DNA of 64,000 nucleotides, taken from positions 1 to 64,000 of the IMG/VR virus record IMGVR_UViG_3300020473_001965, one strand, 5' to 3'. The position numbers and the translations under genes are program-made. The notes beneath the pieces were generated by a model. It saw nothing but the letters and a program-made list of their open reading frames with translations, ran no database searches and was not told the origin of the DNA. This document shows, one piece after another, positions 17,896 to 47,015 of the stretch (position 1 is its first letter; the number at the start of each line of letters is the position of its first letter).

Positions 17896-17971
17896 TGGAG
17901 CCACTGATAGGGTTCGAACCTACGACCTGCTGATTACAAATCAGCTGCTCTACCAACTGAGCTACAGTGGC
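17896..17971 (-). tRNA. tRNA-Thr(UGU)
   Basis: Complete cloverleaf, anticodon loop TTTGTAA, encoded CCA. Confidence 0.95.
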
Positions 17972-20096: not shown

Positions 20097-20340
20097 ACCT
20101 TTTAGGTTTTTCAAAGCTGCATTTTTCTAAAAGGGCAATTCGCTGTCCACGCTCAATGGTCATGATTTGAACGCACGGGCCCCATTTTTCATCTATAAAA
20201 AAACCAGTAATTTTACCGGACAGTACAGTGCCGCCATAAGCTTCGAACCATATCTCATCAAGGAGCTTAAAACCCTCCATTTCTTCGATAGCGTCTTTCT
20301 TCACTACCTCTTTAACTGTTTTCTTCTTTTTACGTGCCAT
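20074..20340 (-). CDS. Basic hypothetical protein
   Basis: ORF coupled to the dnaJ stop. Confidence 0.6.
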
Positions 20341-21361
20341 GATCTTTTAACTTTTTGATTAATTCAGTACATGAATCCGATAAATTAGTAGGTACTGCAA
20401 TCCCCACCTTGACATATAGGTTTCCCGGGGCAGTTTTCATTCCCGGCATTCCCTTTCCACGAATCTCAAATACTTTTTCACCTTTAGTTCCCTTTTTTAT
20501 CTTTATAGTTTCTTTACCCCACAAAGAATCAACGTTGATCTCTCCCCCAAGTACAAATGTTGAAAATGGTGCAGTTGTCTTTGAGTAAAGATCCTTTCCT
20601 TCTCTTTCAAATGATTTGTGCTGAGCTATTCTTATAACAACGTATGCATCCCCCGGCACTCGAGAAAGATTAACATGGTCTCCCTTCCCTGATATTCTGA
20701 GCCTATTTCCTTCCATCACACCAGGCGGAATATTGACATTAACGATATCAGTTTTTCTTTTGAACGCAGAGCCATTACATGATGAACATGGGTTAGTGAT
20801 TACCTGACCTAATCCATGACATGCCGGGCAAGTCTGATTAAAAACCATGAAGCCTTGTTGTACTCCAACACGACCAGATCCGTTACACTGTCGACAATCT
20901 TCCGGTTTTGAACCTGCTGGATGTCCTCTACCGTCACAGGTATCACATGCGATTGATCGCTGTATTTTTACCTTTCTCATCCCGCCAAAAGCTGCTTCTT
21001 CTAGAAGAATGGTTTTCTCTGCTAAAACATCGCCATTTCTAAAATCTTGACGGGTTTCTTGTGCACGGCGCCTCGCATCTCCAAACCCTCTGCCAAAAAA
21101 ATCACCAAAATGAGAAAAAATATCTTCAAAACCGTGAAATTCATGAGCACTGCCGCCACCACTGTCGTAGTGAGCCCTCTTTTTAGGATCAGACAGTACT
21201 GAATAGGCTTCTGATACTTCTTTAAATTTTGTTTCTGCCGTACTATCCCCGGGATTTTTGTCAGGATGGTACTTTAGAGCGAGTTTCCTATAAGCTTTCT
21301 TGATAGTGGTTTGATCAGCATCTTTTCCAACACCTAATATGTCATATAAATCATTTTTCAT
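20330..21361 (-). CDS. dnaJ: DnaJ chaperone
   Basis: J-domain HPD, G/F linker, four CxxCxGxG-type repeats. Confidence 0.95.
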
Positions 21362-24670: not shown

Positions 24671-25552
24671 CTATTCGACGTCAAACATGTCGGACAGGGA
24701 TAAAGTTGAATATTTTCCGGTCTTTCGAGCCTTCTTCACGGCCCTCTCTACGCTAGCGTTCGCGCGAGAAGCCATCGGAGCAGGTGCAGATTCTTGTTTA
24801 ACAACCTTCACGTTAAGTGGGCTCATGTCATGGGCAGCCTCTTGACCCTCTTTCTCTTGAGCGCGGTCCATTCTAGGAATTAAGTGCTTAAAAACCTTCT
24901 GGACTAGCTGTTCTGCCTGGACAAGATAGATCTGGACCCATTCAGGTAGATCGTCTTCATCGTGCAAGTGAGCACCCAGCAGACCTGAAAGATAATGGAT
25001 TAACATTAATTGATCACGAGCGTACTGGCCTTCGTGAGCATCGGACTTCTGGTCACCATAATCGAGCATCATCCCTTCCCCGGGGATAGACGATGTCGGC
25101 TTTGATCCACACCCACATGCCTCGAGGATCGCCCGAGATGTAACACCCTCACTAGTTGGAATCAATGATAGAACATCATCTACCATTCTTTGCGCTTCGT
25201 CTTCGGAAACACCCATGTTCAAAAGATATCTCATGAGTTGTGTAAGCTCTTGAGTAGTATCTGGGATATTGCTAAGGTCGCCTCGCTCTACACCTCTAGC
25301 ATCCGCAGGTTCTTGATCTTCGCGCCGTGCCGGATCTTTGTATGGTAGCTTATAAGCTTGCTTACGGGTCTTTCGCGCGAGCTGCCCTGTTTCAGCAACG
25401 ATAGAGCTGCTTTTTTCCGCTAGCGTTCGAGATTCGGGCTCTCTCGCGTCCTCATTGAGGTCGCTCGAATCGCCCTTGGACTGGTCAATTCCTGTTTCAT
25501 TAAAATCTCGCCAGCCATTCCAAAGATCATACGAAGAAATCTTCTTAGTCAT
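24671..25552 (-). CDS. Putative virion protein with C-terminal DxDxLPEWVQ domain
   Basis: Paralogous domain shared with 25545-26339. Confidence 0.65.
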   Translation of the reverse strand: MTKKISSYDLWNGWRDFNETGIDQSKGDSSDLNEDAREPESRTLAEKSSSIVAETGQLARKTRKQAYKLPYKDPARREDQEPADARGVERGDLSNIPDTTQELTQLMRYLLNMGVSEDEAQRMVDDVLSLIPTSEGVTSRAILEACGCGSKPTSSIPGEGMMLDYGDQKSDAHEGQYARDQLMLIHYLSGLLGAHLHDEDDLPEWVQIYLVQAEQLVQKVFKHLIPRMDRAQEKEGQEAAHDMSPLNVKVVKQESAPAPMASRANASVERAVKKARKTGKYSTLSLSDMFDVE

Positions 25553-26339
25553 TGTCTAGCTCCAGCTCACCATCTTCTGGTTTGACAATTTTATACTCAA
25601 GATGATGCTTCACCTTGCCGATCGCATCAGAGATGATTGCAATTTTAGATTGGCACCACTCGGGGATCTCATCTTCATCCTCTAGCATATTCCAGAGGTC
25701 AACACCGTATTCAGCTATCTTATAGAGTTGTTGGCGTGTCATACGAGACTTACCACCGTTGCCGAGCTTTCTTCCACCTTCGTCAGGTCCCATGCCGTCG
25801 CCGTCATGGTCAGGTTTAGCACCTTGGACTTTTGTAATAACACCGTGAGGAGGCTCCTCAGGAAGCATTTGAGGTAACTCCTCTCCGGGTTGCTCACTAT
25901 GTCCGCCACAAGCTTCAATCAGCTTAAGAAGCTCACTTCTATCCATTTTTCTTGTCATTTTCTTCCCCTCATTAGGTCGAAGTGCTCGATGAGCCATGTA
26001 TAGGTCATCCGAAGCCGCTTCGGGCCCGATTGACTCGAGAAATCCCACTAGAACTTGGTGGGAAGACATACCGCTTGGGTCTTCGTCGACAGCAATTGCT
26101 TCAAGCTTTTTATCGAATTCTCCAGTAGCATACACATCATTTCGCAGGAGGTCAAGAATGTGATCAGCAACTTGATTTGGAGTTTTCGCCCGTTGACCAA
26201 AGACTCTACCGAGCTCATATCGAAGACTATAGTAGCTTGTCTCTACATTAGGGTCAAGCATAATGTTCTCATTCATCTCCGCAGATATCTCTAAGATCAT
26301 TCTACGTAGCTGTTTTGCTTCGAAGTGGTCAGTAGGCAT
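25545..26339 (-). CDS. Putative virion protein with C-terminal DEDEIPEWCQSKI domain
   Basis: QLRRMILE N-motif; paralogue of the neighbour. Confidence 0.65.
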   Translation of the reverse strand: MPTDHFEAKQLRRMILEISAEMNENIMLDPNVETSYYSLRYELGRVFGQRAKTPNQVADHILDLLRNDVYATGEFDKKLEAIAVDEDPSGMSSHQVLVGFLESIGPEAASDDLYMAHRALRPNEGKKMTRKMDRSELLKLIEACGGHSEQPGEELPQMLPEEPPHGVITKVQGAKPDHDGDGMGPDEGGRKLGNGGKSRMTRQQLYKIAEYGVDLWNMLEDEDEIPEWCQSKIAIISDAIGKVKHHLEYKIVKPEDGELELDND

Positions 26340-26344
26340 TGATT

Positions 26345-26911
26345 CTAGTCCTCTAGAATACCAGCAAGCTTAGCGAGACGACGGTTATTGAATGATTCTT
26401 GAACGGGTTGACGTCCTTCCTCTTCTTCCGCAGCTTCGATGTGACCAGCCATCTCACTAGTAAGCGATTGTGTCTCTTCAAGTGCCTCTACTGTTGGACG
26501 ATTCGGTTCGGTACCGGTTTGAGTATAAACTTCTTCAGCTTCACCCATGCGACCCACATTAATGTTGTCATGCCATGTTTCGCCGGCCTCAGCTCCACCG
26601 CGGAGGGCAGCAAGGACTTGCTCAATGCTGGCTCTTCCAGATTGAACAGCATTTCTCAAAGTTTCCAGAGCAGCATCAAAGCTGTCATCAGCCGCCGCGC
26701 GACCTTCAGGAGATCCGTACTGGCCTACGCCCTCTTCGACTTCGTCGACTTCATCAAGCTCTTCATTTTCAAAATAAGATTCTTCAACTTCGTCGAGGTC
26801 TTCATCCTCTTCAGTTTCAGCATATTCTTCAGATTCGGTAAGCGTCTCTCCACGAACAGCCTTAAGCTCTTCGAGGATCATCGCTCTCAGGTCCTTATTG
26901 GTAATTTTCAT
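26345..26911 (-). CDS. Very acidic putative head-core/scaffold-like protein
   Basis: MKITNKDLRAMILEEL start, E/D-rich, RRLAKLAGIL end. Confidence 0.65.
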   Translation of the reverse strand: MKITNKDLRAMILEELKAVRGETLTESEEYAETEEDEDLDEVEESYFENEELDEVDEVEEGVGQYGSPEGRAAADDSFDAALETLRNAVQSGRASIEQVLAALRGGAEAGETWHDNINVGRMGEAEEVYTQTGTEPNRPTVEALEETQSLTSEMAGHIEAAEEEEGRQPVQESFNNRRLAKLAGILED

Positions 26912-27049
26912 TGTTTTGCTTCCTTATAATTTCGAGGCTAAGCCTCATTGTTAAATACCACAAGCTATATTTATCATCTCCGGGGAAACTATTCCCTCCA
27001 GATGCTCATTAACAGCTACTATTTGTGTGATTTTTATAAAAATTTGCGT

Positions 27050-27589
27050 TCAACGACCTTCGCCGCTGCCTCCTTGTGCGTTCAAACCACTACGATCATG
27101 CCAGTCGTAGCTCGTAGCATCGTCAATGATGGGTTCCCCACCAGCGCCGGCAGCCCACGTGTAACAGGTACGAGCGGAATGGCACTTAAAGTGGTGCATC
27201 CAACAGTACCCAAGCGTTTCCCAGCCTCTCCCCTCGTCCATGGCGTCTTTGATCTCGTCCCACGTCATAAGCTCACCAGGCATGCACTCAGACATGCGAG
27301 GCGATATGTCAAACGCGGCACAATTCGAGCACTTCGATTCCTGCGCGGCTTCCGGCGTCGTACTCCAGTGATCCGCTAATCTCTCCCAATAGTCTTTATC
27401 TGAGGGGTTAAGCGGACCATACTGGATGTGCTTAGCCTTGATAGCGCTATCTCGATTCTTCGTATTAAGCTTTAAGTTTTGTGTTGCTGGGGGACACGCG
27501 AAGTCTTTTGCACGCCGCTTTGTATCTTCGACTAAGCGATCCATCTCTTGTTTAATAATAGACCTGAGAAGGTTTGGGCTGAGCTTCAC
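27050..27589 (-). CDS. Cys-rich phage protein
   Basis: MKLSPNLLRSIIKQEM start; CPPATQ, CSNC, YCWMHHFKCHSARTC. Confidence 0.7.
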   Translation of the reverse strand: MKLSPNLLRSIIKQEMDRLVEDTKRRAKDFACPPATQNLKLNTKNRDSAIKAKHIQYGPLNPSDKDYWERLADHWSTTPEAAQESKCSNCAAFDISPRMSECMPGELMTWDEIKDAMDEGRGWETLGYCWMHHFKCHSARTCYTWAAGAGGEPIIDDATSYDWHDRSGLNAQGGSGEGR

Positions 27590-27603
27590 GTTTATCCCCG
27601 TGA

Positions 27604-28266
27604 TTATATCTTTTGGGTGATCGTGTTGTTCTTAAAGTCGCCAGGTCGCACCGTGTCTTCTTTCCCGGAAGCGAGGATCTCTTCTGCGCTAGCGTAGTAC
27701 CTTTCCCCGGTGAGTGATGCGTTCATAGCGCTTTGGAATGAGTCGTACGTGCCGATCGCCTTTGGGAGTACGAAGAGCTGATACTGATCATCGGGCGTGC
27801 CTGGGAATCCCTTTCCTAAGATAACGTTCTGCCCGGATCTGGCAACGCCTCCTAGACCCTTAGGAGAATTAACTAGCCAGATGATAGGCAATTCCTTCTC
27901 CACGCCGTCTACCTTAAGCGTCTTTCCCTCGCTTAGAATGTTACTAATCTCTTCCTTGATGATCTCTCTAATTCTACTCTCTGAAATAAGCATAGTGTTT
28001 CTTCCTTTTAGTTGCTTGTTTTCTTCCTTGACACCTTGGATGAACATCTTAAGGTCTTCTGGATCCATTGGTGGCCTCTCTGCACCTATTAACTCGAGTA
28101 TCTCTGTTCTTATTGCGTCGTAATCTTGACTTCGTTCAATATACGAACCAATTGCAGACTCAAATTCATCCGGGTCTTCGGCATCTAGTCTGTGGAGCTT
28201 CTCTGCCCCGATGTGTCTAACGATGTCTTGTGCACTCATCTGCATGAAGATGTTCCTCCGATACAA
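27604..28266 (-). CDS. Hypothetical protein with internal MLISESRIREIIKEE motif
   Basis: ORF track plus motif. Confidence 0.6.
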   Translation of the reverse strand: MYRRNIFMQMSAQDIVRHIGAEKLHRLDAEDPDEFESAIGSYIERSQDYDAIRTEILELIGAERPPMDPEDLKMFIQGVKEENKQLKGRNTMLISESRIREIIKEEISNILSEGKTLKVDGVEKELPIIWLVNSPKGLGGVARSGQNVILGKGFPGTPDDQYQLFVLPKAIGTYDSFQSAMNASLTGERYYASAEEILASGKEDTVRPGDFKNNTITQKI

Positions 28267-28407
28267 TTAAATATCTCTTTGGTCCCTAAAAATTAATAGG
28301 GAGACCCTATTTTCAAGGGCCTCCCCCACGGAGCGATAATCGAGGTTATTACTAATGGCCGTCCGTATATCTATAATACTGCACCATTAACGCCTGTGTT
28401 AAATAAC

Positions 28408-28434
28408 AAAAAGGGGGACGCCGAAGCGTCCCCC
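28408..28434 (-). terminator. Intrinsic terminator
   Basis: GGGGGACGC-UUCG-GCGUCCCCC hairpin followed by U-run. Confidence 0.85.
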
Positions 28435-28459
28435 GAGTACTAGACTTATCAATTGATGA

Positions 28460-28693
28460 TTAGCCTACTTGAACGTCACCATTGTAGCCGAACTCACTGT
28501 TAAGGAAGCCCTGAAGAGCCTGTGCCTCGCGAACCGTCATGGTGAGAGAGGTCTGGCTCGTGCTATAACCGGTATCCGTTGCTGGATTGGTCGTAATAGT
28601 GAGCGAGTTGCCCCCTGCCTTGTGAGCTGTTGCGTTGCGGGTGATGCCAAAGCTGAAGCGCTTGGTAGACTTAGTCTTAGTGTAATTACTCAT
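28460..28693 (-). CDS. Small hypothetical protein with own promoter and terminator
   Basis: AGGAG RBS; flanking signals. Confidence 0.7.
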   Translation of the reverse strand: MSNYTKTKSTKRFSFGITRNATAHKAGGNSLTITTNPATDTGYSTSQTSLTMTVREAQALQGFLNSEFGYNGDVQVG

Positions 28694-28780
28694 GTGTTCA
28701 TTTTCTCCTAAATTGTTGAACGTTGTGTCGGTATTTTCCGAACTCTGTAATACTACTGCAACGGGTCACCGTGTACAACT

Positions 28781-28910
28781 AAAAAGTTTTCGAAATTTTC
28801 TCCGGAAGAAATTTTTGAGTTTTACTTTTTTCCATTTTGAATAGCGCAGCTATTTTAGCTCTCTTCGTTGAAGGGGTAAAAAGTTTTCGGCAAGTTCTCC
28901 GGAAAAAAAT
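28781..28910. repeat. Imperfect direct repeat AAAAAGTTTTCG..TTCTCCGGAA(G/A)AAAT (x2)
   Basis: Copies at 28781 and 28878. Confidence 0.75.
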
Positions 28911-28920
28911 GCGTAGACTT

Positions 28921-29113
28921 AGGCCCATCCCAGGGGGTACCCCCCGACTGAATACGGGGGCTGGGGGGCCCCGCCCTCTGGGGCCGGGGGCCCTAGGCTC
29001 TAGATAGGGGGGCCTGGGGTAGGGCGCCCTAGGTCTGCACGGGTAGGGGCCCCCGGGGCTATGGTAGGGGCGCCCTTACTGTCACCGGTCATGTAGATGG
29101 GGCGCGCCCTAGG
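28921..29113. repeat. G-run and palindrome-rich block (GGGGGTACCCCC, TAGGGCGCCCTAGG variants); candidate genome terminus or packaging signal
   Basis: Non-coding, extremely GC-rich, repeated palindromes. Confidence 0.6.
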
Positions 29114-29387
29114 CCTGCATGAGCCGATTGTATGTCTCCCTAGGGATGAGCTTTCCCTCTACTGTGCCGTCGTAGTTCTTAAAGATAACGAAGTTAAAGC
29201 GATTCGACGGGACAAGCTTAACCAGCTCGCATGCCTGATGCTCATCCTCGGTTGTATAACTACCCATATCCCACAGGATGGTGAACCAGCCGTTGCCATG
29301 AACCTCTGTGACCTTCCCTTGATACTTCCTGCCACCGGCATATGTGATTCGGTCCTCTACCATGTCGCCTACTTTAAGCATTGTCAT
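29109..29387 (-). CDS. MKVGDLV-family KOW/SH3-like protein
   Basis: MLKVGDMV..GKV..ILWD. Confidence 0.7.
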   Translation of the reverse strand: MTMLKVGDMVEDRITYAGGRKYQGKVTEVHGNGWFTILWDMGSYTTEDEHQACELVKLVPSNRFNFVIFKNYDGTVEGKLIPRETYNRLMQA

Positions 29388-29406
29388 ACTCCTGCATTGC
29401 TTAGTG

Positions 29407-29443
29407 ACATTCTTATTATATCCCGCGCCGCGGCGTCTTACAT
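29407..29443 (-). promoter_or_regulatory. Repeated early promoter
   Basis: ATGTAA-N17-TATAAT; core identical to the 32151 copy. Confidence 0.75.
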
Positions 29444-29635
29444 TTAGCTCGTGACAACTGTTAGCCTTTTTTGCTCATGAACCGTTGTAGTGTCGCCTTC
29501 TAAGACTTCCCATGTACAGTACTCAGCATCGTAAGACAGTCGCTTGCGCCGTACGACGACCCCCACCCTGCCAGTGTCCAGCCTTCCTCCCCACCGAGAG
29601 ACCTTCCAGATCTTTACTAGATCACCGACTTTCAT
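29444..29635 (-). CDS. MKVGDLV-family cassette
   Basis: Starts in the ATGAAAGTCGGTGA overlap. Confidence 0.75.
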   Translation of the reverse strand: MKVGDLVKIWKVSRWGGRLDTGRVGVVVRRKRLSYDAEYCTWEVLEGDTTTVHEQKRLTVVTS

Positions 29636-29804
29636 TGATAACCTCTGCATTCACAAAATCAAGATCACTGCGGGTCCACGTATCAAATTCGCCATCAATA
29701 AGAAATTCAAACTTATAGCCATCTGCCCATGTACAAACACCAATCCAGCTGTGGCGATCCATTTCAGTGATATAATCTACTTTGACGCAATCACCGACTT
29801 TCAC
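29622..29804 (-). CDS. MKVGDLV-family cassette
   Basis: MKVGDCV...EVINESR. Confidence 0.75.
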   Translation of the reverse strand: MKVGDCVKVDYITEMDRHSWIGVCTWADGYKFEFLIDGEFDTWTRSDLDFVNAEVINESR

Positions 29805-29952
29805 TGATCACCTCTAAATCACGCAGAGAAAATTTCTCGCCACAATGCAGGATTACCCACGGGTGCCTTCGCGCCATGGGATTATCAGTAACAATCTCCA
29901 TAATTATTCCAGTTGTTCCATTTTTTAGTCTTACTAGATCACCGACTTGCAT
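29791..29952 (-). CDS. MKVGDLV-family cassette, 53 aa (not in ORF track)
   Basis: Hand-translated MQVGDLVRLK...LEVISESR. Confidence 0.75.
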   Translation of the reverse strand: MQVGDLVRLKNGTTGIIMEIVTDNPMARRHPWVILHCGEKFSLRDLEVISESR

Positions 29953-30118
29953 CGATCACCTCTTCAATTTGTGTATAGTGAAAAGCCTTCAACACACCGT
30001 CAACTTTGATAATAGGGTTCTTGAACGAATCCAGATCGACGACTAGTCCCAACTTGCCAGCTGAAGGACCGTTCCTTCGTGTCGAGTCGTGAAGCTTTAC
30101 TAGATCACCGACCTTCAT
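29939..30118 (-). CDS. MKVGDLV-family cassette, 59 aa (not in ORF track)
   Basis: Hand-translated MKVGDLVKLH...EEVIDASR. Confidence 0.75.
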   Translation of the reverse strand: MKVGDLVKLHDSTRRNGPSAGKLGLVVDLDSFKNPIIKVDGVLKAFHYTQIEEVIDASR

Positions 30119-30275
30119 TAATCACCTCAATCTGAGTCTCTGGCCAGACAACCATCGATCCATCACAGTCTAGAATATCCCACCAGCCTTCTGCAAACTC
30201 ACCATAACTGACTAGCACTCCGATTCGCTCTTTGTCGAAAGAGCCCATAAACTTTACAATGTCACCGACTTTCAT
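30105..30275 (-). CDS. MKVGDLV-family cassette, 56 aa (not in ORF track)
   Basis: Hand-translated MKVGDIVKF...IEVINEGR. Confidence 0.75.
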   Translation of the reverse strand: MKVGDIVKFMGSFDKERIGVLVSYGEFAEGWWDILDCDGSMVVWPETQIEVINEGR

Positions 30276-30465
30276 TGATGACCTCCATCAGAGATACCAT
30301 TGACTGGGTGAAGTCTCCGTTGTCCCAAAGGACGTCTGCACTCAGTTGCTTCCTCGTGCGACCACTGGTCCAGACCTGCATGACGACACCTGTCTGTCTC
30401 TCACCCGGTGTCACCGTCGATCCCCAAGTGCCTTTAAACTTTATCAGATCTCCAACCTTCAGCAC
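30262..30465 (-). CDS. MKVGDLV-family cassette
   Basis: MLKVGDLI...VLWDNG...EVINESR. Confidence 0.75.
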   Translation of the reverse strand: MLKVGDLIKFKGTWGSTVTPGERQTGVVMQVWTSGRTRKQLSADVLWDNGDFTQSMVSLMEVINESR

Positions 30466-30650
30466 ACCTTCTCCAACTCATCCTCGTCAAACTCAGCGAC
30501 CTGACCCAGAACCATGACTTTGGCTGCGGGAATGTAGAGCCGCTTTGCCAAAGCAATGACCACACCGATCTGGCCTTCTGCTTCCGGCCATGCAGAATGG
30601 ACACTGTTGTCATGAAGAATCCTGACCATGTCTCCTACAGCCAACTCCAC
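30459..30650 (-). CDS. MKVGDLV-family cassette
   Basis: ELAVGDMVRI..GVVI. Confidence 0.7.
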   Translation of the reverse strand: MELAVGDMVRILHDNSVHSAWPEAEGQIGVVIALAKRLYIPAAKVMVLGQVAEFDEDELEKVC

Positions 30651-30651
30651 T

Positions 30652-30765
30652 TCAGCACCCCACACAGTGCATGCACCATGGCATGTTGCAGGCTACCGCG
30701 ATGATGGCGGGAACGATTGCGATGATTGCGAGTGTTCTAGTGATGTCTTGAGCAGCTTGTGCCAT
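30652..30765 (-). CDS. 37-aa membrane peptide ending CMHCVGC (not in ORF track)
   Basis: MAQAAQDITRTLAIIAIVPAIIAVACNMPWCMHCVGC; GAGG RBS. Confidence 0.65.
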   Translation of the reverse strand: MAQAAQDITRTLAIIAIVPAIIAVACNMPWCMHCVGC

Positions 30766-30805
30766 TTTGAGTACCTCTTGGTGAGAGTGACGTAAGGCGT
30801 TTCCT

Positions 30806-30846
30806 CCTTACATTCTTATAATACCACGCTCACCCGAGTCTTACAC
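30806..30846 (-). promoter_or_regulatory. Repeated early promoter
   Basis: GTGTAA-N17-TATTAT with TG extension, ends GTAAGG. Confidence 0.8.
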
Positions 30847-31020
30847 TAACTCAAGCCACTCCGCCTTGACACACCACTGGCGTCCGTCTTCCCACATAAC
30901 GAGAATGTTGTCGTCTCTCATAAACTTCGGGAGGATCTTGACAACCAATCCGGAATGCGCGCGGTCTGGTTTGTGGCTGTACTTTACTAGAGAGCCTTCT
31001 TCGATTCTGGCTTTACCCAT
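30841..31020 (-). CDS. MKVGDLV-family cassette, 59 aa (not in ORF track)
   Basis: MGKARIEEGSLVKY..GLVV..VMWEDG..WLELV. Confidence 0.7.
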   Translation of the reverse strand: MGKARIEEGSLVKYSHKPDRAHSGLVVKILPKFMRDDNILVMWEDGRQWCVKAEWLELV

Positions 31021-31220
31021 ACTCCCTCCTTCATCCAGTAGTCGACGTCGCTACGAGAGACACCTTCAATTGAAGTCTCCAACGTCGTCCCCGGGATACC
31101 TGACCACAAGACCTCTACCCAATCACACGCTTCAGCGAACTCTTCGTCCGAGTCATAGGGCGTGATGTCCAGGATCACACCCGTCTCATCACCGCACTGC
31201 ACCAAGTCACCGACTTTCAC
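30987..31220 (-). CDS. MKVGDLV-family cassette
   Basis: MKVGDLV..GVIL..VLW. Confidence 0.75.
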   Translation of the reverse strand: MKVGDLVQCGDETGVILDITPYDSDEEFAEACDWVEVLWSGIPGTTLETSIEGVSRSDVDYWMKEGVWVKPESKKAL

Positions 31221-31410
31221 TGACTACCTCCAAAAACATTTCTTTCACTCTTCGCGTTGTCCCTGTCTCAGGCCACATGACGTGTACGATGTTGTACATA
31301 GAGTGCAGCCCTTGATCCTCATGCTTGACGACGATGCCGTGACCAGGTGGGTAGGCATGGATCCGACTCGAGTAGTTAACTATCTTTACTAGATCACCGA
31401 CTTTCATCAA
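31207..31410 (-). CDS. MKVGDLV-family cassette
   Basis: MKVGDLV...LEVVSESR. Confidence 0.75.
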   Translation of the reverse strand: MMKVGDLVKIVNYSSRIHAYPPGHGIVVKHEDQGLHSMYNIVHVMWPETGTTRRVKEMFLEVVSESR

Positions 31411-31624
31411 TCACCTCGAGCTCCACCACCGGGATGTTCAATTTGCAGTCGTCGTACATCACAACTGCATGCAGCTCCGGGTCTACCTCTCGCCAGTCAA
31501 TCATTGGACCCAGCTCATCTGTCCGCCAGACTTTCTTCTGAATCGTGTCGACAACAATTCCCGTACGGGTCGCGACCTGTTTTTCATCGATCTTCTTTAG
31601 TCTTACCAAATCACCTGTCTTCAT
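31394..31624 (-). CDS. MKVGDLV-family cassette
   Basis: MKTGDLV...LEVIDESR. Confidence 0.75.
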   Translation of the reverse strand: MKTGDLVRLKKIDEKQVATRTGIVVDTIQKKVWRTDELGPMIDWREVDPELHAVVMYDDCKLNIPVVELEVIDESR

Positions 31625-31802
31625 GTACTCTCTCCACTCTTTCTCGCATAATCCAGTTGCACCTGCCATCAGCCCACAGTACGACTGGGTCACGCCTCCC
31701 CGGCCGTGGGTCTGATCCTTGATTGTCTGACCAATCGATAACAACCCCTGTCATCCGACTCTCCGAAAAGAGGTTCTTCACTAAGTCACCAATCTTCAGC
31801 AT
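31611..31802 (-). CDS. MKVGDLV-family cassette
   Basis: MLKIGDLV..VLWADG..HEDR. Confidence 0.75.
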   Translation of the reverse strand: MLKIGDLVKNLFSESRMTGVVIDWSDNQGSDPRPGRRDPVVLWADGRCNWIMRERVERVHEDR

Positions 31803-32150: not shown

Positions 32151-32191
32151 CCTTACATTCTTATTATATCCCGCGCCGCGGCGTCTTACAC
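32151..32191 (-). promoter_or_regulatory. Repeated early promoter
   Basis: 41-bp family copy. Confidence 0.8.
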
Positions 32192-32990: not shown

Positions 32991-33031
32991 CCCTACATTT
33001 ATATAATACCACAACTTACCAAGTCTTACAT
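32991..33031 (-). promoter_or_regulatory. Repeated early promoter
   Basis: 41-bp family copy. Confidence 0.75.
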
Positions 33032-35834: not shown

Positions 35835-35921
35835 TGGTAGGACAGGCGGGACTCGAACCCGCATGCTCATTCGAGCGAGAGATTTTAAGTCTCTTGTGTC
35901 TACCGATTCCACCACTGTCCC
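35835..35921 (-). tRNA. tRNA-Leu(UAA)
   Basis: Cloverleaf with long variable arm, loop CTTAAAA, CCA. Confidence 0.95.
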
Positions 35922-35927
35922 GAGTTT

Positions 35928-36005
35928 TGGTAGGCTCACCGGGACTCGAACCCGGAACCCGCAGTTTATGAGACTGCTGCTCTAACCTGATTGAGCTATG
36001 AGCCT
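35928..36005 (-). tRNA. tRNA with CAU anticodon, probably Ile2 (alternatively elongator Met)
   Basis: Cloverleaf, loop CTCATAA, AGGCTCA acceptor resembles Ile tRNAs, CCA. Confidence 0.9.
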
Positions 36006-36014
36006 GTAAGATGT

Positions 36015-36130
36015 GAGACACCTGTTTGTTAGTCGATAATAGTTGTATGCGCGTTAATAACCGACTGCTAGGCTGTGCCTCCCTGCGCCCGGGCGAGCGT
36101 TTGTGTCCCTGACCTAATGTCTCCGCCGCC
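36015..36130 (-). ncRNA. Candidate small structured RNA between tRNA-Lys and tRNA(CAU)
   Basis: GAGACA..TGTCTC closing stem, AGTCGGT..ATCGACT; upstream promoter-like ATGAAC..TACGAT. Confidence 0.4.
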
Positions 36131-36177
36131 ACTCTTTATCGTACCGCGCTCCCCGTCAATGTTCATGCCAAAAGTAA

Positions 36178-36253
36178 TGGTGGGCCGTCCGAGACTCGAA
36201 CTCGGAACCTGCGGATTAAAAGTCCGATGCTCTGCCGGTTGAGCTAACGGCCC
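36178..36253 (-). tRNA. tRNA-Lys(UUU)
   Basis: Cloverleaf, loop CTTTTAA, CCA. Confidence 0.95.
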
Positions 36254-36257
36254 GTAC

Positions 36258-36692
36258 GATAGAGTTCCCAGCTTCTCTATCTAGACACAGCCTGTAAAGT
36301 CAGTACTTCGACTACGCTTACGCAACCACGAGATAGCTTACTGCTCGTAAGTCTTACCCACTATCTCTCTGGCCTGTGTCCCCCACTATAAGAAAGAGCT
36401 TTGGTGAGTTGGCACGTATCCCAGTACCCGTTCGCTCACCCTTGTGTTTCGGAAGTGCTCTACCCTCCCGATCTTCGCCGCCCCTCCCTTGTGCACAGGG
36501 AATGGCATTGAAAATGTAAAGTGAAGAGGAGGTAGGAATCCGTTTAGTTCGGCCGAGACATGCGGTTGGTGCATCATGCCTCTCGGTGCCGCGGACCTCT
36601 TGTGACCACCAATACGTCACTCACCGTCAGCTTCTTTGTTCGACGACTGCCGATTCCTACCAGTTCCTCGGACCGCTAAATCCAAGGCCTCT
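36258..36692 (-). ncRNA. Candidate structured ncRNA(s) in the tRNA operon leader
   Basis: Long-range GGTAGGAATC/GATTCCTACC, CCGAGA/TCTCGG, GGTGAG/CTCACC, GACACAG/CTGTGTC and GAGATAG/CTATCTC helices; no credible ORF. Confidence 0.6.
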
Positions 36693-36696
36693 AAAT

Positions 36697-36731
36697 TGTC
36701 AAAGAGCGGAGAGGACCTAATCTTTCGATTC
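36697..36731 (-). promoter_or_regulatory. boxB-like GAAA hairpin plus boxA (CGCTCTTTGACA) antitermination site
   Basis: Resembles rrn leader arrangement; lies between promoter and RNA genes. Confidence 0.6.
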
Positions 36732-36767
36732 CAGACGGCTGAACCATCAGCGCGAGCAGTGTCCTTT

Positions 36768-36808
36768 CCTTACTTTCTTATTCTACCACGTTTGGGGGGT
36801 TTTTACAT
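36768..36808 (-). promoter_or_regulatory. Repeated early promoter
   Basis: ATGTAA-N17-TAGAAT, 41-bp family. Confidence 0.8.
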
Positions 36809-36813
36809 CAAAA

Positions 36814-36890
36814 TGGCACGCCCGATAGGATTCGAACCTATGACCCTCGGCTTAGAAGGCCGATGCTCTATCCAGCTGAGCTACGGGCGC
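36814..36890 (-). tRNA. tRNA-Arg(UCU)
   Basis: Cloverleaf, loop TTTCTAA-type with anticodon TCT, CCA. Confidence 0.95.
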
Positions 36891-37334: not shown

Positions 37335-37373
37335 TCCACCTCTATTCTACCGTGCGTTTCTTCCGTTTTACAC
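37335..37373 (-). promoter_or_regulatory. Repeated early promoter (variant)
   Basis: GTGTAA-N17-TAGAAT. Confidence 0.65.
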
Positions 37374-39890: not shown

Positions 39891-39931
39891 TGGTTCTATC
39901 TAATAATACCACGCTGCGATGCGTTTTACAC
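39891..39931 (-). promoter_or_regulatory. Repeated early promoter
   Basis: 41-bp family copy. Confidence 0.75.
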
Positions 39932-40341
39932 TAAAGCACGGGCGTGTGATTGGGGTCGTCGGTCACCAGGTCTACAGCTGCCTTGTATCGGGCGTGGTCA
40001 TATCCTTGTGTGTCGATAAGCAGCCTATCTCCCATCTGATGGTCCGGACCGTCGAAGCACTTTACGATAAACTTCGTGGGGTCACCCGCCATCTTACGAG
40101 CGTGAAAGAGCATCGCGAGGTCTTCGAACTCAGGCAGCCAAAAGACCAGCTCGCGGAACTCTGAGTACGGCACAAGCAGCTCCACAGGGACCAGCTCCAC
40201 CTCCTTACCCGGCAGTCCGCATCTCCGCAGAACCTCCGTGATTGTCGGGTACTGCTCTTCATCTGCTTCGACACACAGACACATGTTCTCATCAAACATC
40301 GTGTGCTTCTTCCGATATCCCGCGTGTTCTACTACAAACAT
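39931..40341 (-). CDS. Hypothetical protein
   Basis: TAATG coupling; DTQGYDHARY motif. Confidence 0.6.
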   Translation of the reverse strand: MFVVEHAGYRKKHTMFDENMCLCVEADEEQYPTITEVLRRCGLPGKEVELVPVELLVPYSEFRELVFWLPEFEDLAMLFHARKMAGDPTKFIVKCFDGPDHQMGDRLLIDTQGYDHARYKAAVDLVTDDPNHTPVL

Positions 40342-40789: not shown

Positions 40790-41365
40790 GGAACCCGTGT
40801 GTATCATTGAGCGAACGGCAGTCCAGAACTCGATCTCATTAGTATGGTGACTCAGCTGCCTTCTCGAGTCATTCACTGATGTCCTCGATCGTTCGTCTAG
40901 CTTCTGAAGACAGGGCTCGAGCATTTCGTTGCCCGGCCCATAGACAAGCTTTACCCTGACATCCCCCGGCCGGGTGAGACGATGAAGATTGGTCAGCCAC
41001 TGAAAGAGGTAGTACGACACAGTCCTCGCTTCTTCTATGTTTGCAGCCGGAATGTAACCAGCAGGGGTATACCCAATAGTCACCTCATAGACTCCGCTTC
41101 CGCCCTCTTCTGACCGCTGGGTCACTAGAGGTTCTAGGGTGGACCATATCCTCTTTGCAGCTGTCCTCAACTCCTCGCGATCATCATCCGGCAAAGACCA
41201 TTGACTCAGTAGTCCAGACCCTTCAGGCCGGTGCTGCCAGACTTCTGTAAACAGCCCAGTCTCCACGTCATAGGCGTTTCTCAAATTGCTATCCCAAGCT
41301 TCGTCGACTGTAGGGGCGTATGTGATGTCCTCAAGCATTGTCTTGAGCAAGGACACTAGACCCAC
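40784..41365 (-). CDS. Hypothetical protein, paralogue of 44186-44923
   Basis: GVYEVTIGY..YIPAANIEEA. Confidence 0.65.
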   Translation of the reverse strand: MGLVSLLKTMLEDITYAPTVDEAWDSNLRNAYDVETGLFTEVWQHRPEGSGLLSQWSLPDDDREELRTAAKRIWSTLEPLVTQRSEEGGSGVYEVTIGYTPAGYIPAANIEEARTVSYYLFQWLTNLHRLTRPGDVRVKLVYGPGNEMLEPCLQKLDERSRTSVNDSRRQLSHHTNEIEFWTAVRSMIHTGSV

Positions 41366-41562
41366 CTGTCTAGTCGAGTAGAGTGCTCGAGCTTAGTTTC
41401 CTCTTCCTCTTCAACCTCAACCGGTGTTGGCTCCAGGTATGGGTCTAGACTATCGCCCCTGATCCACATCCCAAACTGAGCACCCCACGTCGGATGAAGG
41501 CTGATAGCAATGAGGAAGCCCCAGACTCCGAATCCGATGATAGTGAATAGCGCTTCAACCAT
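41356..41562 (-). CDS. Small membrane protein
   Basis: N-terminal TM; TAATG coupling. Confidence 0.6.
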   Translation of the reverse strand: MVEALFTIIGFGVWGFLIAISLHPTWGAQFGMWIRGDSLDPYLEPTPVEVEEEEETKLEHSTRLDRWV

Positions 41563-42905
41563 TACGCCGCCTCCTTGCTTGCATTGCCCTTCAGCTCCAC
41601 GACTGTGTCACCGCGGTGTGCGTCGAAGTACAGCTTGCGTCCCGGGACGATCACCCATGCCCGACGCATGCGGGAGGGACCAGGGTCGGCAGCCTCCCCG
41701 TCGGTGCAGACGATGTAGCCATCGAAGCGGTGACGGTTCTCTTCAGCGTGCCGAGCAACTGCCCTGAAGCACGTGCCGCCGCAGCGGAAGCGGTTGAGCT
41801 TCGAGCGCGAGCCCTTCTTCCAGACGATCTCATTGTCGGTGTCAACCGTGCTGTCGAATGGGTAGAAGGTGAACGTTACCTTGCGTGCCAGCTGCTCCAG
41901 CTCTGCGTAGAGCAGTGCCAGCGACTCATCATCAACCGAGCCACTCTGATCGACGTAGACTGCCACGTTGGCGCTGTGACCAATCTTGCGGCCGCTGTGG
42001 ATGTAGGGGTACTTGCGGTTGAGACGCTTCATGGTGCGGCTCTTGTTAGCGCGCTGACTCATGCCAACGAAGTTACGAAGGACTGCGCGCCAGTCAACCT
42101 CATTCGAGCACATCCGACGGAGCTCGCTCCGCATCTCAGCGGGCACCGAGCCCCACTGGCCCTTGCTGTCACACTTCTTGACTGCGTTCTTGAGGGCTTG
42201 CTTGACCTTGCCCTTGACGAGCTCCTTCTCAGCGTCGGTAGCACCCTCGCCCCACTCACCGTGGTCGTCCATGGTACCGGGAACGCCGTCTCCCTCTCCG
42301 GGCTGGCCGCCTTGGCCGTCGCCACCAGTGAGATCGTCCTTCATCTGCTCGTCATCCATCAGCTGGCCGAAGTACCACTCCGCGCTCATGTTCGGCGGGA
42401 AGCTTTCAATCTTTGCCGAGATGCGATCGAAGCGTGCCTTGGCCTGCTCATCGAGCTTGGCGTACGCATCCGGATCGATGTGGATGGCCTGGCCAGGAAT
42501 GAGACCACCCTTGGGAAGCTCCTCCACTGGGATGATCGAGTTGATCGCGAGGTCGGTCGCGTAGTTGTGAACGATGTGCGGGGTCTTCTTGCGGCTAGTC
42601 GTGTGCTCGAAGACCAGGTGGTACACCTCGTGCTTGAGAAGTCCCTTTACTTCTTTGTTGCTCAGCGAGGCGAGGAAGCGGCGGTTCCACCACATCTTGA
42701 TATCACCGTCCTTGGCGAGCACGCCGGCGGTCGGGATCGAGTCCGTCTCCACCTTGGTGACGTCACGAAGCATGGCCGAGAAAAAGGGCTCATCCCACAT
42801 CAACGCTGTGAGGTGGTTGCCAAGGTCGAAAGCAGCGAGCTCCGCGTCGGTCAGCTCTGCGCCTGGTGCCACTGGGATGTCGGTCGAGGTAGTGTTGTCA
42901 GCCAT
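41562..42905 (-). CDS. DUF2201-type metallopeptidase-VWA protein
   Basis: HEVYH, NYATDLAIN, DQSGS MIDAS, GGT, TDG. Confidence 0.88.
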   Translation of the reverse strand: MADNTTSTDIPVAPGAELTDAELAAFDLGNHLTALMWDEPFFSAMLRDVTKVETDSIPTAGVLAKDGDIKMWWNRRFLASLSNKEVKGLLKHEVYHLVFEHTTSRKKTPHIVHNYATDLAINSIIPVEELPKGGLIPGQAIHIDPDAYAKLDEQAKARFDRISAKIESFPPNMSAEWYFGQLMDDEQMKDDLTGGDGQGGQPGEGDGVPGTMDDHGEWGEGATDAEKELVKGKVKQALKNAVKKCDSKGQWGSVPAEMRSELRRMCSNEVDWRAVLRNFVGMSQRANKSRTMKRLNRKYPYIHSGRKIGHSANVAVYVDQSGSVDDESLALLYAELEQLARKVTFTFYPFDSTVDTDNEIVWKKGSRSKLNRFRCGGTCFRAVARHAEENRHRFDGYIVCTDGEAADPGPSRMRRAWVIVPGRKLYFDAHRGDTVVELKGNASKEAA

Positions 42906-42914
42906 TTGTTATCT

Positions 42915-42955
42915 CCTTACTATCTAATAATATCACGCTGCGCCGAATCTTACAC
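42915..42955 (-). promoter_or_regulatory. Repeated early promoter
   Basis: 41-bp family copy. Confidence 0.85.
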
Positions 42956-44923: not shown

Positions 44924-44945
44924 ATGTCTGTTCTCCTTAGTGATT

Positions 44946-46297: not shown

Positions 46298-46784
46298 TCA
46301 CCTCAATAAAATTAATTTTTGCCCACCCTGAACCCGTGCCACTTTATCGGTCGAAACCGGTGCACACCACGCCACTACTTCGCTCGGGGGATGAGCTTCA
46401 GTGCACGCCAAACGTCGATGCCCGAGGGTCACCGCGAAACCTCCTACTCTTTATCTTACCGCAGGGAGCGACAGTGTACACTTTGCGAGTCTTTTTTTAT
46501 TTTTACAACAAAAACGTGTACAATATGTGAGCCCGGGCTAAGTACGCTAGTCCCCCGATTCCCGTCAGTTTTCGACCTGTCAATGCGTACGCTGACCCGA
46601 GTACTCGCGGAGGGGGCGTGTCGAGGGCTGCTCTACGGGCTACCATGCGTGGCCATTTAGCCACGTGCCATTGATCATGGGGAGTACCCAAGTCCGCTTT
46701 TTTAGAGTGTACGAAAAGCCCGGGCAAAAGTACCTCTGGTCGACGAAGAGAGAGATAGCCCTCGTTACCCAATGCTAGTGCGCG

Positions 46785-46995
46785 AGTAACGGGTCGTCGA
46801 CGAGTAACTTGCGGGCATTAGTTACTTGCGGGCCCGAGGAAAAGTTACTTGCGGGCAGGGCGCAAGCGCGAGCAAAGCTGGGCACAAGTTACTCGTCGTC
46901 TGAGGAAAAGTTCGAGGAAAAGTAACTTGTCGAAGGGTCGCGTGTCGTTCCCTCTCTATACGAGTATGAGTACGAGGACGAGTTACTTGTCGTCC
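46785..46995 (+). repeat. Cluster of AGTWACTTG repeats; three carry the extended CGAGGANNAGTWACTT motif
   Basis: Copies at 46803, 46820, 46843, 46887, 46921, 46981. Confidence 0.8.
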
Positions 46996-47015
46996 CCCAC
47001 TCTCTTCCTTTCTCT

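What the first reader, a model, noticed from the sequence alone, without database searches (positions are those of the whole stretch)
28781..29113. A-tract repeat abutting a G-run palindrome block: likely genome end or packaging signal
Seen: two AAAAAGTTTTCG..TTCTCCGGAA repeats, then about 190 nt with GGGGGTACCCCC (28933-28944), repeated TAGGG(G)CGCCC/CCCTAGG units and many runs of 4-6 G on one strand (G-quadruplex potential). It sits exactly where gene character changes. Inference: terminase cut site, terminal-repeat boundary or injection-stop signal.
Basis: partly seen in the sequence, partly recalled or inferred. Interest (0 to 1): 0.62.

Follow-up and report, generated by a model that had tools for sequence, protein, structure and literature searches.

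The report
Conserved boundary element of marine jumbo phages
A 330-base non-coding stretch (a block of GC-rich palindromes followed by two curved A/T repeats) is a real feature, kept once per genome in a whole family of uncultured marine giant phages; it marks the end of their early-gene block and may be where the packaged DNA molecule has its repeated end, but that last point could not be tested with reads.

Summary
Window 28780-29113 lies in a 415-nt gap between two minus-strand genes. It holds the GC maximum and the densest palindrome cluster of the 235.7-kb phage contig, next to two 32-35-nt A/T-tract direct repeats with a CCGGAG core. It is not an artefact: five independent assemblies give the identical sequence. 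The same composite, in the same order and orientation, occurs once per genome in about 20 related marine jumbo-phage contigs (GC 32-52%), always just upstream of the same gene cluster. Its core is 89% identical between two relatives whose neighbouring gene is 57% identical. I found no conserved RNA fold, no Rfam match and no canonical G-quadruplex, and the one-strand G bias is not conserved. In two metagenomes, contig depth rises 1.5-1.9-fold exactly at the GC/A-tract junction (28866|28889); the high side is the early-gene module. Best reading (about 0.4): a cis-acting DNA terminus or packaging boundary, the inner edge of a terminal redundancy that carries the early genes, which also serves as a transcription stop and start. 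Main rival (about 0.3): a purely transcriptional insulator plus a curved-DNA promoter control region. Read ends could not be examined (only contigs were available). The large terminase is T4 gp17-like, which argues against fixed ends.

The parts
29415..29442 (-). Early-type promoter (TGTAAGAC, 12 nt, extended -10 TATAAT) of the last early gene
   Evidence: Pattern scan. 8 of the 11 genome matches lie at 29.4-45.8 kb, all on the minus strand. An identical copy lies at 32163-32190.
29109..29387 (-). 92-aa ORF (gene callers use a 90-aa start at 29381), the last gene upstream of the element; its stop codon lies inside the first CCTAGG
   Evidence: A homolog (51% identity) is present in relative G001. 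In strain variants homology breaks at 29105/29113.
28991..29113 (.). Variable half of the GC-palindrome block (GGGCGCGCCC, GGGCGCCC, GGGGCCCC/CCCCGGGG, TAGGGCGCCCTA)
   Evidence: Palindromes listed. Only 64% identical to relative G007, and it differs among strains.
28912..28990 (.). Conserved half of the GC block: GGGGCCCC (28965-28972), box with TCAG (28946-28955), palindrome GGGGGTACCCCC (28933-28944), box GGGCCTAAG (28916-28926)
   Evidence: 87.5% identical to G007 and invariant among strains. The boxes GCTCAG and GGCTAAG recur at the same place in 20 relatives. Coordinates.
28866..28889 (.). Place of the depth step: contigs of run X2 end at 28866 and start at 28889, with depth about 4 to the left and about 7.4 to the right
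   Evidence: tables 2 and 8; statistics. An unrelated JGI contig of a 98% strain starts at 28884.
28877..28911 (-). Distal copy of the A/T-tract motif (A/T runs around a CCGGAG core, then CGAAAAC and a T run)
   Evidence: 94% identical to G007. Relatives have a matching copy 10-12 nt after the GGCTAAG box.
28815..28876 (-). Spacer with small palindromes (28842-28861) and a candidate upstream promoter P2 (-35 at 28875-28880, -10 at 28852-28857)
   Evidence: Promoter scan (9 of 12 matches). 84% identical to G007. In most relatives this spacer is 250-480 nt and holds a small opposite-strand membrane-protein ORF.
28780..28814 (-). Proximal copy of the A/T-tract motif, abutting the -35 of P1
   Evidence: 94% identical to G007.
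28750..28778 (-). Promoter P1 of the 77-aa gene: -35 TTGTAC, 17 nt, -10 TAGTAT
   Evidence: The same -35/-10 arrangement stands upstream of the 77-aa homologs in L002-L004 and G007. Coordinates.
28705..28742 (-). 5' untranslated region with a small hairpin (28728-28742) and a Shine-Dalgarno AGGAG (28705-28709)
   Evidence: Read from the sequence. A hairpin is kept at the equivalent position in relatives although its sequence differs.
28460..28693 (-). 77-aa gene of unknown function, the first gene after the element in this phage
   Evidence: At least 337 homologous stretches in marine metagenomes. No family in Pfam, PHROGs or the Atlas.
28413..28434 (-). Intrinsic terminator (9-bp GC stem followed by a T run) that ends the 77-aa unit
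46300..47015 (-). Second repeat-rich non-coding region at the upstream end of the early module (iterons of the AAGT(A/T)ACT type, then an AT-rich stretch). It may be the other boundary of the duplicated segment, or the replication origin
   Evidence: Homologous array in G007. In the complete relative G008 such iterons lie directly upstream of the GC block. Its link to the finding is inference.

Best explanation
The stretch is a single-copy, cis-acting DNA boundary element of a family of uncultured marine jumbo phages of roughly 300 kb. In gene direction it starts right after the stop codon of the last early gene. It has four parts: (1) a cluster of short GC palindromes of the GGGSSCCC type; (2) two conserved non-palindromic boxes (GCTCAG and GGCTAAG); (3) two direct copies of an A/T-tract motif around a CCGGAG core (1-4 copies in relatives), whose three A-run/T-run units are spaced about one helical turn apart and should therefore bend DNA; and (4) a sigma-70-like promoter for the next genes. 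The most likely function is a genome terminus or packaging boundary. Under this reading the roughly 18-kb early-gene module to its right (+ coordinates 28.9 to about 47 kb) is present twice per packaged molecule, as a long direct terminal repeat or a headful redundancy that starts at a fixed site. The element is then the site that the terminase, or another end-defining protein, recognises through the palindrome array and the bent A/T motifs. Because it lies between two same-strand transcription units, it also ends early transcription and carries the promoter region of the next cluster. Shown: uniqueness, anatomy, conservation, position and the depth step. Inferred: that the step reflects terminal redundancy, that a protein binds the palindromes and motifs, and the bending.
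For: The element is unique in the contig. The sequence is identical in five independent assemblies and nearly so in strain variants. The same composite occurs in the same order and orientation once per genome in 7 IMG/VR relatives and at least 15 further metagenome loci, with 27 motif copies on the gene strand and none on the other strand. The non-coding core 28780-28990 is 88.7% identical between G000 and G007, against 57% for the adjacent 77-aa gene (44% at third codon positions) and 48% for the promoter and UTR. Palindromes are enriched family-wide: 118 observed against 39.6 +/- 6.7 in shuffles of 19 blocks. Depth step: in X2, contigs left of 28866 have depths 4.64, 3.8 and 4.1, and contigs right of 28889 have 7.58, 7.75 and 7.19. 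In X3 the left values are 4.34, 3.69 and 2.98 and the right values 6.68, 4.69 and 6.2. The ratios are 1.77 and 1.53, or 1.93 and 1.68 after correcting for dropped single-copy words; all six right-hand contigs exceed all six left-hand ones (Mann-Whitney p = 0.001). X2 shows no second strain in the stretch. The known strain variants conserve the left side and vary on the right, which is the opposite of what a strain mixture would need to give this step. The high-depth side is the early module: 8 of 11 early-type promoters lie at 29.4-45.8 kb. That module is bounded at its far end by a second repeat-rich non-coding region. This resembles phage T5, where a conserved non-coding region rich in repeats and palindromes lies at the inner end of the long terminal repeat that carries the pre-early genes (bioRxiv 10.1101/866236).
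Against: No raw reads were available, so there are no read-start or read-end data. Depth was seen over only 4 kb, in two samples of one study, at low coverage, and one right-hand contig of X3 (4.69) is barely above the left values. The other edge of the high-depth segment was not observed. Many contigs read through the junction; this is expected for a collapsed repeat but gives no support. The large terminase is of the T4 gp17 lineage: 30% identity to T4-like cyanophages and E = 2e-45 to T4 gp17, with no match to other solved terminases. Known phages with that type of terminase package by headful without fixed ends (my knowledge). The element is more than 50 kb from the terminase gene. In the complete relative G008 the iterons and the element are adjacent, so a long repeat bounded by them cannot be general. 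The element always sits just upstream of the same gene cluster, as a promoter control region would.
Confidence: 0.4

Rival explanations
1. Purely transcriptional boundary. The GC-palindrome block stops or insulates transcription coming from the early genes. The bent A/T motifs are upstream activating or operator sites for a phage or host regulator that controls the promoter(s) of the 77-aa gene and the 'M(K/R)IT..QLR.II.EE' gene cluster. The element has no role in DNA ends.
For: It lies between two same-strand transcription units. The GC block always starts right after the stop codon of whichever gene comes before it. In G001 the first part of the block is a canonical intrinsic terminator, a 17-bp stem followed by a T run. 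Sigma-70-like P1 (and possibly P2) follow the motif copies directly, and P1 is conserved in relatives. In all seven genomes examined the element sits immediately upstream of the same gene cluster, whatever lies before it. Copy number and spacing of the motif vary, as they do in regulatory regions.
Against: The window's own GC block has no hairpin-plus-T-run terminator. Its fold energy is no better than shuffles, z = 0.25. No RNA structure is conserved: 0 pairs in 19 sequences. Terminators do not need 88% sequence conservation or conserved non-palindromic boxes. The distance from the motif to the -10 changes by 5 nt between close relatives and by more than 20 nt in others. The motif is absent from every other promoter of the genome. 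This reading does not explain the depth step.
Confidence: 0.3
2. Origin of phage DNA replication: repeated protein-binding sites, an easily melted A/T-rich stretch and a GC-rich clamp, as in iteron-type origins.
For: It is single-copy, conserved and non-coding, with direct repeats next to an A/T-rich segment and a GC-rich block. The phage encodes its own DnaB-like helicase, polymerase and UvsX-like recombinase.
Against: There are only two repeat copies, 97 nt apart (a single clear copy in several relatives). No DnaA boxes or IHF sites are present, and cumulative GC skew shows no inflection. The iteron array at 46.3-47.0 kb, with 8 or more short repeats in both orientations followed by an AT-rich stretch, is the better origin candidate. 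If replication were primed by transcripts from P1/P2, the left side would be over-represented, not the right (inference).
Confidence: 0.08
3. A structured non-coding RNA gene, or a G-quadruplex-forming switch, encoded in the GC-rich block.
For: It is a GC-rich island inside AT-richer genomes (0.64 GC in a 0.32-GC relative). The + strand of the window carries G-runs.
Against: There is no Rfam family at gathering score, and only one chance-level match at E = 0.33. RNAalifold gave -7.4 and -16.2 kcal/mol with a covariation term near zero for 6 sequences on either strand, and 0 pairs for 19 sequences. Fold z-scores were 0.25 and -0.62. There is no canonical G4 motif, and the G/C skew of the gene strand ranges from -0.19 to +0.20 among relatives, so G-richness of one strand is not a conserved property.
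Confidence: 0.03
4. Assembly artefact or chimeric junction.
For: Extreme composition and repeats can break or mis-join assemblies, and GC content of the contig is heterogeneous.
Against: The sequence is 100% identical in a JGI contig, an ENA SPAdes contig of 296,665 bp, an NCBI Tara contig, a TARA scaffold and a Logan contig. Single contigs span it in other studies and in strain variants. Homologous elements occur in about 20 other phage contigs.
Confidence: 0.01

Closest known systems
Phage T5 repeat region 3 / injection stop signal at the inner end of the left terminal repeat
   Same: [quoted passage not shown] Both are conserved among relatives whose neighbouring genes are poorly conserved. 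Both lie at the inner end of the segment that holds the first-expressed genes; in T5 the terminal repeat ends inside that region (bioRxiv 10.1101/866236). Here the element ends the early module, and depth steps about two-fold at it.
   Different: There is no sequence similarity, and the paired DnaA boxes that define the T5 region are absent. The element is far shorter (0.33 kb against 1.2-1.7 kb). The terminase is T4 gp17-like rather than T5-like. Neither a terminal repeat nor two-step DNA transfer has been shown.
pac sites of headful phages, e.g. P1 pac (clusters of a short palindromic hexamer flanking a bend) and SPP1 pac (repeats plus intrinsically bent DNA); description from my own knowledge
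   Same: Both combine an array of short palindromic words with bent A/T-rich DNA, occur once per genome, and would give excess depth on one side of the site.
   Different: Known pac sites lie in or next to the small-terminase gene, whereas this element is more than 50 kb from the terminase gene. Cleavage here is untested. A step near two-fold is larger than a processive headful series would give (inference).
Iteron-type replication origins (plasmid RK2 oriV, phage lambda ori; from my own knowledge)
   Same: Both have direct repeats next to an A/T-rich segment and a GC-rich segment, in a single copy.
   Different: There are only two repeats, spaced irregularly across relatives. No initiator gene is adjacent and no DnaA boxes are present. 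A better iteron array exists at 46.3-47.0 kb.
Upstream curved DNA / UP-element-like promoter activators together with an intrinsic terminator or insulator (ordinary operon boundary)
   Same: A/T tracts in helical phase lie directly upstream of a -35 hexamer. A GC-rich palindromic region follows a stop codon, and in G001 it is a true terminator.
   Different: The motif is 32-35 nt long with a conserved GC core. It is repeated, absent from all other promoters, variably spaced from the -10, and much more conserved than the promoter itself.

Membership tests
Long direct terminal repeat boundary (T5/SPO1-type genome ends) | The segment on one side is present at twice the copy number of the rest of the genome | tested here: inconclusive
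   Depth ratios are 1.77 and 1.53 (1.93 and 1.68 corrected) in two samples, 6 against 6 contigs, p = 0.001. Only 4 kb was seen, at low depth, from contigs rather than reads, and the far edge was not observed.
Long direct terminal repeat boundary (T5/SPO1-type genome ends) | Read or molecule ends pile up at the boundary | not testable with these tools
Long direct terminal repeat boundary (T5/SPO1-type genome ends) | Terminase of a lineage known to make fixed ends | tested here: not met
   The large terminase matches only T4 gp17/RB49 among solved structures (E = 2e-45). Its nearest cultured relatives are Mel-JY01, the immuto phages and T4-like cyanophages.
T5 injection stop signal | Pairs of DnaA boxes inside large inverted repeats | tested here: not met
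   No TTWTNCACA, and no box with one mismatch, in 28650-29150 on either strand.
pac site of headful phages | Lies within or next to the small-terminase gene | tested here: not met
   The large terminase is at 210753-212375 and the portal at 208743-210749. The element is at 28.9 kb, and the contig lacks about 60 kb between its two ends.
Iteron-type replication origin | Three or more regularly spaced iterons, an adjacent A/T-rich unwinding element, and host-factor boxes | tested here: not met
   Two copies 97 nt apart, one clear copy in several relatives, and no DnaA or IHF sites.
Intrinsic (rho-independent) terminator | GC-rich hairpin directly followed by a T run on the transcribed strand | tested here: not met
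   The scan of 27500-30500 finds none inside 28912-29113. One is present in the G001 homolog, so the result for the family as a whole is mixed.
Structured RNA family (Rfam or new) | Match to a covariance model, or a conserved fold with covariation | tested here: not met
   Rfam; RNAalifold: covariation near zero, then 0 pairs; z-scores.
G-quadruplex element | Four G-runs with short loops on one strand, conserved in relatives | tested here: not met
   No motif with loops of 7 or less; two with loops of 12 or less. G/C skew of the block changes sign among relatives.
Sigma-70-type promoter with upstream A/T element | -35 and -10 hexamers 16-18 nt apart, conserved in relatives, with an A/T-rich region at -40 to -60 | tested here: met
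   P1 is TTGTAC, 17 nt, TAGTAT at 28750-28778 with the proximal motif abutting it. Equivalent hexamers stand upstream of homologs. Activity was not tested.

The most novel reading that the evidence does not exclude
This family of roughly 300-kb marine phages, although it has a T4-type terminase, packages DNA with a fixed end at this element and an 18-kb terminal repeat that carries its whole early 'takeover' module. Under this reading the palindrome array plus bent repeats is a new kind of end-defining or DNA-transfer-pausing signal, a functional analogue of the T5 injection stop region built from entirely different sequence and without DnaA boxes.
Probability: 0.12. Interest if true: 0.8.

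Novelty: new variant of a known kind. Interest (0 to 1): 0.55.

Why it matters
Cis-acting DNA signals of uncultured giant phages are almost unknown, because they cannot be found by protein homology. This one is easy to recognise: a GGGSSCCC palindrome cluster, then GCTCAG and GGCTAAG boxes, then A/T motifs with a CCGGAG core. It is widespread in marine metagenomes and more conserved than the genes around it. If it marks the physical genome end, it gives a natural start coordinate for this phage family, shows that a T4-type terminase can work with fixed ends, and identifies the early module as terminally repeated. If it is regulatory, it pinpoints the switch between the early genes and the next expression class, along with the binding site of a regulator still to be found. 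Either way it is directly testable with existing Tara Oceans reads.

Tried and rejected
(1) Similarity to cultured phages: blastn of 28400-29500 and tblastn of the 77-aa protein against 50,697 phage records gave no match.
(2) Structured RNA: rejected.
(3) G-quadruplex as the conserved property: rejected.
(4) General phage promoter motif: rejected, because the A/T motif occurs only at this locus in each genome. T4-type late promoters (TATAAATA) are not used on the gene strand: 1 hit.
(5) Assembly artefact: rejected.
(6) Contig ends as a sign of a physical end: small contigs end at 28884, 28889, 28922 and about 28940. Comparable clusters of ends occur at 27906-27914, 28273-28301 and 28672-28751, and many contigs read through, so this is not informative.
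(7) Terminal repeats in relatives: the only relative classed as having direct terminal repeats (G008, 293,409 bp) has just a 38-bp end overlap inside a gene. That is a circular assembly closure and says nothing about real ends.
(8) GenBank records of the nearest cultured terminase relatives start at arbitrary genes and annotate no repeats.
(9) Reaching the 296,665-bp and 382,139-bp contigs to look for a second copy of the early module: those records are not held.
(10) Host or prophage context: only one hit, in an unclassified MAG contig.
(11) Function of the flanking proteins: no Pfam, PHROG or Atlas family.
(12) Covariation test of the palindrome after the TCAG box: relatives carry different palindromes there (AGCCC-A-GGGCT, GGGCCC-centred, GGGGG-TA-CCCCC), but they are out of register by one column, so no pairwise count was possible.

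Full report
CONTEXT. The window is the first 64 kb of a 235,672-bp viral contig (IMG/VR class 'linear', CheckV 87%). The source record is a JGI marine metagenome contig. Nearly all genes lie on the minus strand. The phage carries a tmRNA and five tRNAs, a PrkA/DUF444/SpoVR operon and DnaJ, and a T4 gp17-like large terminase at 210.8-212.4 kb, with portal, major head protein, DNA polymerase, DnaB-like helicase and UvsX-like recombinase. Other assemblies of the same phage reach 296,665 and 292,784 bp and extend past both contig ends, so the genome is about 300 kb. No cultured phage resembles the region.

THE OBSERVATION.
- The two A-tract repeats are 28780-28811 and 28877-28908 (84% identical, 97 nt apart).
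- GGGGGTACCCCC is at 28933-28944.
- The 200 nt from 28922 are the GC maximum of the whole contig, 0.725.
- The block has the highest density of perfect palindromes in the genome (8 per 250 nt against a mean of 1.2), and 0 of 1000 shuffles reach it.
- It holds 4 of the contig's 5 CCTAGG and both of its GGGGCCCC.
- The repeat words occur nowhere else in 235 kb.

The stretch fills a 415-nt gap between two minus-strand genes. Upstream in gene direction is the last member (29109-29387) of a tandem array of small overlapping paralogs. Downstream is a 77-aa gene (28460-28693) with its own promoter, 5' hairpin, ribosome-binding site and strong terminator.

IT IS REAL DNA. The sequence is 100% identical across the element in five independent assemblies (JGI, ENA SPAdes, NCBI Tara, a TARA scaffold and Logan). 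It is 97-98% identical in strain variants. Logan contigs of a different study cover 28370-28866 and 28889-29436 with no difference. One contig of a third study runs colinearly from 28159 to 29105.

IT IS CONSERVED AND FAMILY-WIDE. A pattern search and searches with the 77-aa protein recovered relatives in IMG/VR and in JGI metagenomes.
- In seven IMG/VR relatives (G000, G001, G002, G003, G006, G007 and the complete 293-kb G008) and at least 15 further metagenome loci, the same composite occurs once, in the same order and orientation.
- The order is: a GC-rich block with clustered GGGCCC/GGGGCCCC/GGGCGCCC, two conserved boxes (GCTCAG and GGCTAAG), then 10-12 nt later an A/T motif, and usually further copies of that motif before the next gene.
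- All 27 motif copies lie on the gene strand.
- The block stays GC-rich (0.64) even in a genome of 0.32 GC.
- Between G000 and G007 the core 28780-28990 is 88.7% identical, and the two motifs 94%. The adjacent 77-aa gene is 57% identical (third codon positions 44%) and the promoter/UTR 48%. That indicates purifying selection on non-coding DNA.
- Palindrome enrichment is shared by the family: 118 observed against 39.6 +/- 6.7 expected.
- The motif consensus contains three A-run/T-run units about 10-12 bp apart, so it should be intrinsically bent. This is inference from the sequence, not a test.

WHAT IT IS NOT.
- Not a structured RNA. There is no Rfam match, fold energies are no better than shuffles, covariation is near zero in 6 sequences on either strand, and no consensus pair appears in 19 sequences.
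- Not a conserved G-quadruplex. There is no canonical motif, and the G/C skew of the block changes sign among relatives. The conserved property is self-complementarity, not G-richness of one strand.
- Not a general promoter motif.
- Not a T5-type DnaA-box array.

TRANSCRIPTIONAL SETTING. A promoter class (TGTAAGAC, 12 nt, extended -10) followed by a small hairpin and a conserved ribosome-binding region is concentrated at 29.4-45.8 kb: 8 of 11 genome matches, all on the minus strand. This defines an early module of about 18 kb that ends at the element. After the element come P1 (28750-28778) and possibly P2, then the 77-aa gene. Next comes a cluster of acidic proteins that share an N-terminal 'M(K/R)IT..QLR.II.EE' motif. 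In every relative the element lies directly upstream of this cluster, whatever precedes it. In G001 the first part of the GC block is a textbook terminator; the window's block has none.

THE DEPTH STEP. All runs were available only as contigs, so read ends could not be examined. Contig depths nevertheless change at the element.
- In run X2, three contigs left of 28866 have depths 4.64, 3.8 and 4.1, and three contigs right of 28889 have 7.58, 7.75 and 7.19.
- In run X3 the left values are 4.34, 3.69 and 2.98 and the right values 6.68, 4.69 and 6.2.
- The length-weighted ratios are 1.77 and 1.53. After allowing for words seen once being dropped, they are 1.93 and 1.68. All six right-hand contigs exceed all six left-hand ones (p = 0.001).
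- X2 shows no second strain here. The known variants keep the left side at 97-98% and differ on the right, so a strain mixture should raise the left side rather than the right.

The simplest reading is that the early module is present at about twice the copy number of the DNA to its left, with the boundary inside 28866-28889, at the junction of the GC block and the distal A/T motif. A terminal repeat, or a terminal redundancy starting at a fixed site, would give exactly this. At the far end of the early module lies a second repeat-rich non-coding region, 46.3-47.0 kb, with 8 or more AAGT(A/T)ACT-type iterons followed by an AT-rich stretch. It could be the other edge of the repeat or the replication origin.

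WEIGHING. The terminus or packaging reading is the only one that accounts for uniqueness, conservation, position and the depth step together. It also has a known analogue in the repeat- and palindrome-rich region at the inner end of the T5 terminal repeat. Several points count against it. The terminase is of the T4 gp17 lineage. The depth evidence is thin: 4 kb, two samples of one study, low coverage. In G008 the iterons and the element are adjacent. The element's constant position upstream of one gene cluster is what a control region would show. I therefore put about 0.4 on a terminus or packaging boundary that also serves as a transcription boundary, about 0.3 on a purely transcriptional insulator and control region, about 0.08 on a replication origin, and very little on an RNA or G4 element or an artefact.

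NOVELTY. The sequence family itself appears undescribed: I found no match in Rfam or in cultured phages. I made no literature search for the element itself; the searches I ran concerned the cultured terminase relatives and the T5 signal. In kind, it is a new variant of known phage cis-acting boundary signals. The decisive test, depth and read-end mapping of raw Tara reads over 15-65 kb, is simple and uses public data.

Noticed in passing
window 46300-47015 (and G007 7310-7720; G008 46080-46160 and 40170-40300; G004 5540-5995): Arrays of short iterons of the GTTACT/GTAACA type (8 or more copies in both orientations in the window), followed by an AT-rich stretch and an early-type promoter. The array sits where GC content drops and at the upstream limit of the early module. 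In G008 it directly precedes the GC block. It is a candidate replication origin or the other edge of a terminal repeat.
   Followed up: partly
window 29109-31744 and on to about 35 kb: Tandem array of about 15 small (53-116 aa) paralogous genes that begin M(K/Q)VGDLV and end EVI.ESR, with overlapping stop and start codons. Gene content differs between strains (contigs skip or replace members), and many metagenome contigs join at 29613-29645 and 30252-30262.
   Followed up: partly
window 29415-29442, 30818-30845, 32163-32190, 33003-33030, 37344-37372, 39903-39930, 44095-44122, 45751-45778: A promoter class (TGTAAGAC/TGTAAAAC, 12-13 nt, extended -10 TATAAT-like), often followed by a small hairpin and the box CCTCACCAAGGA before the start codon. 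It is confined almost entirely to 29-46 kb, which suggests host-polymerase early genes.
   Followed up: partly
window 24671-28266 (and clusters in G001, G002, G003, G006, G008): A family of acidic proteins that each begin with a conserved N-terminal motif M(K/R)IT..QLR.II.EE; some genes carry the motif twice. It resembles the cleavable capsid-targeting leaders of T4 internal head proteins (a recollection, not tested). There are no Pfam or PHROG hits.
   Followed up: no
relatives: L017 7200-7403 (minus strand), G002 about 2270-2480, G003 about 47400-47600: In most relatives the spacer between the distal and proximal A/T motifs holds a small opposite-strand ORF for a roughly 60-aa membrane-like protein. 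The window's lineage (G000, G007) has lost it and keeps a 62-nt spacer.
   Followed up: no
window 5354-5720, 17896-17971, 35835-36890; 9400-13855; 20330-21361; about 5727-5918: Phage-borne tmRNA (tag ANNNYHYEQRLAA), five tRNAs, a PrkA/DUF444/SpoVR operon, DnaJ, peptide deformylase, and a 63-aa Hc1 histone-like protein (Pfam PF07432 in precomputed hits).
   Followed up: no
window 41000-47000 compared with the rest: Strong compositional heterogeneity: GC is 0.54-0.60 at 41-46 kb (MoxR-like AAA ATPase and VWA/DUF2201 genes) and 0.47-0.53 at 25-41 kb, against 0.33-0.44 elsewhere. The early module is compositionally distinct from the rest of the genome.
   Followed up: no
window 27173-27214: A 42-nt stretch shared with a much more abundant, otherwise unrelated 5.3-kb contig (depth 29 against 4). 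Several assemblies break here (X2, X3, NCBI contig CETM01181330.1).
   Followed up: no
window 29105-29113: In two strain variants (a contig of run X7 and L048) homology to the window stops exactly at the upstream edge of the GC block, where a different gene replaces the 92-aa ORF. The element's upstream edge is thus a recombination or mosaic junction.
   Followed up: partly
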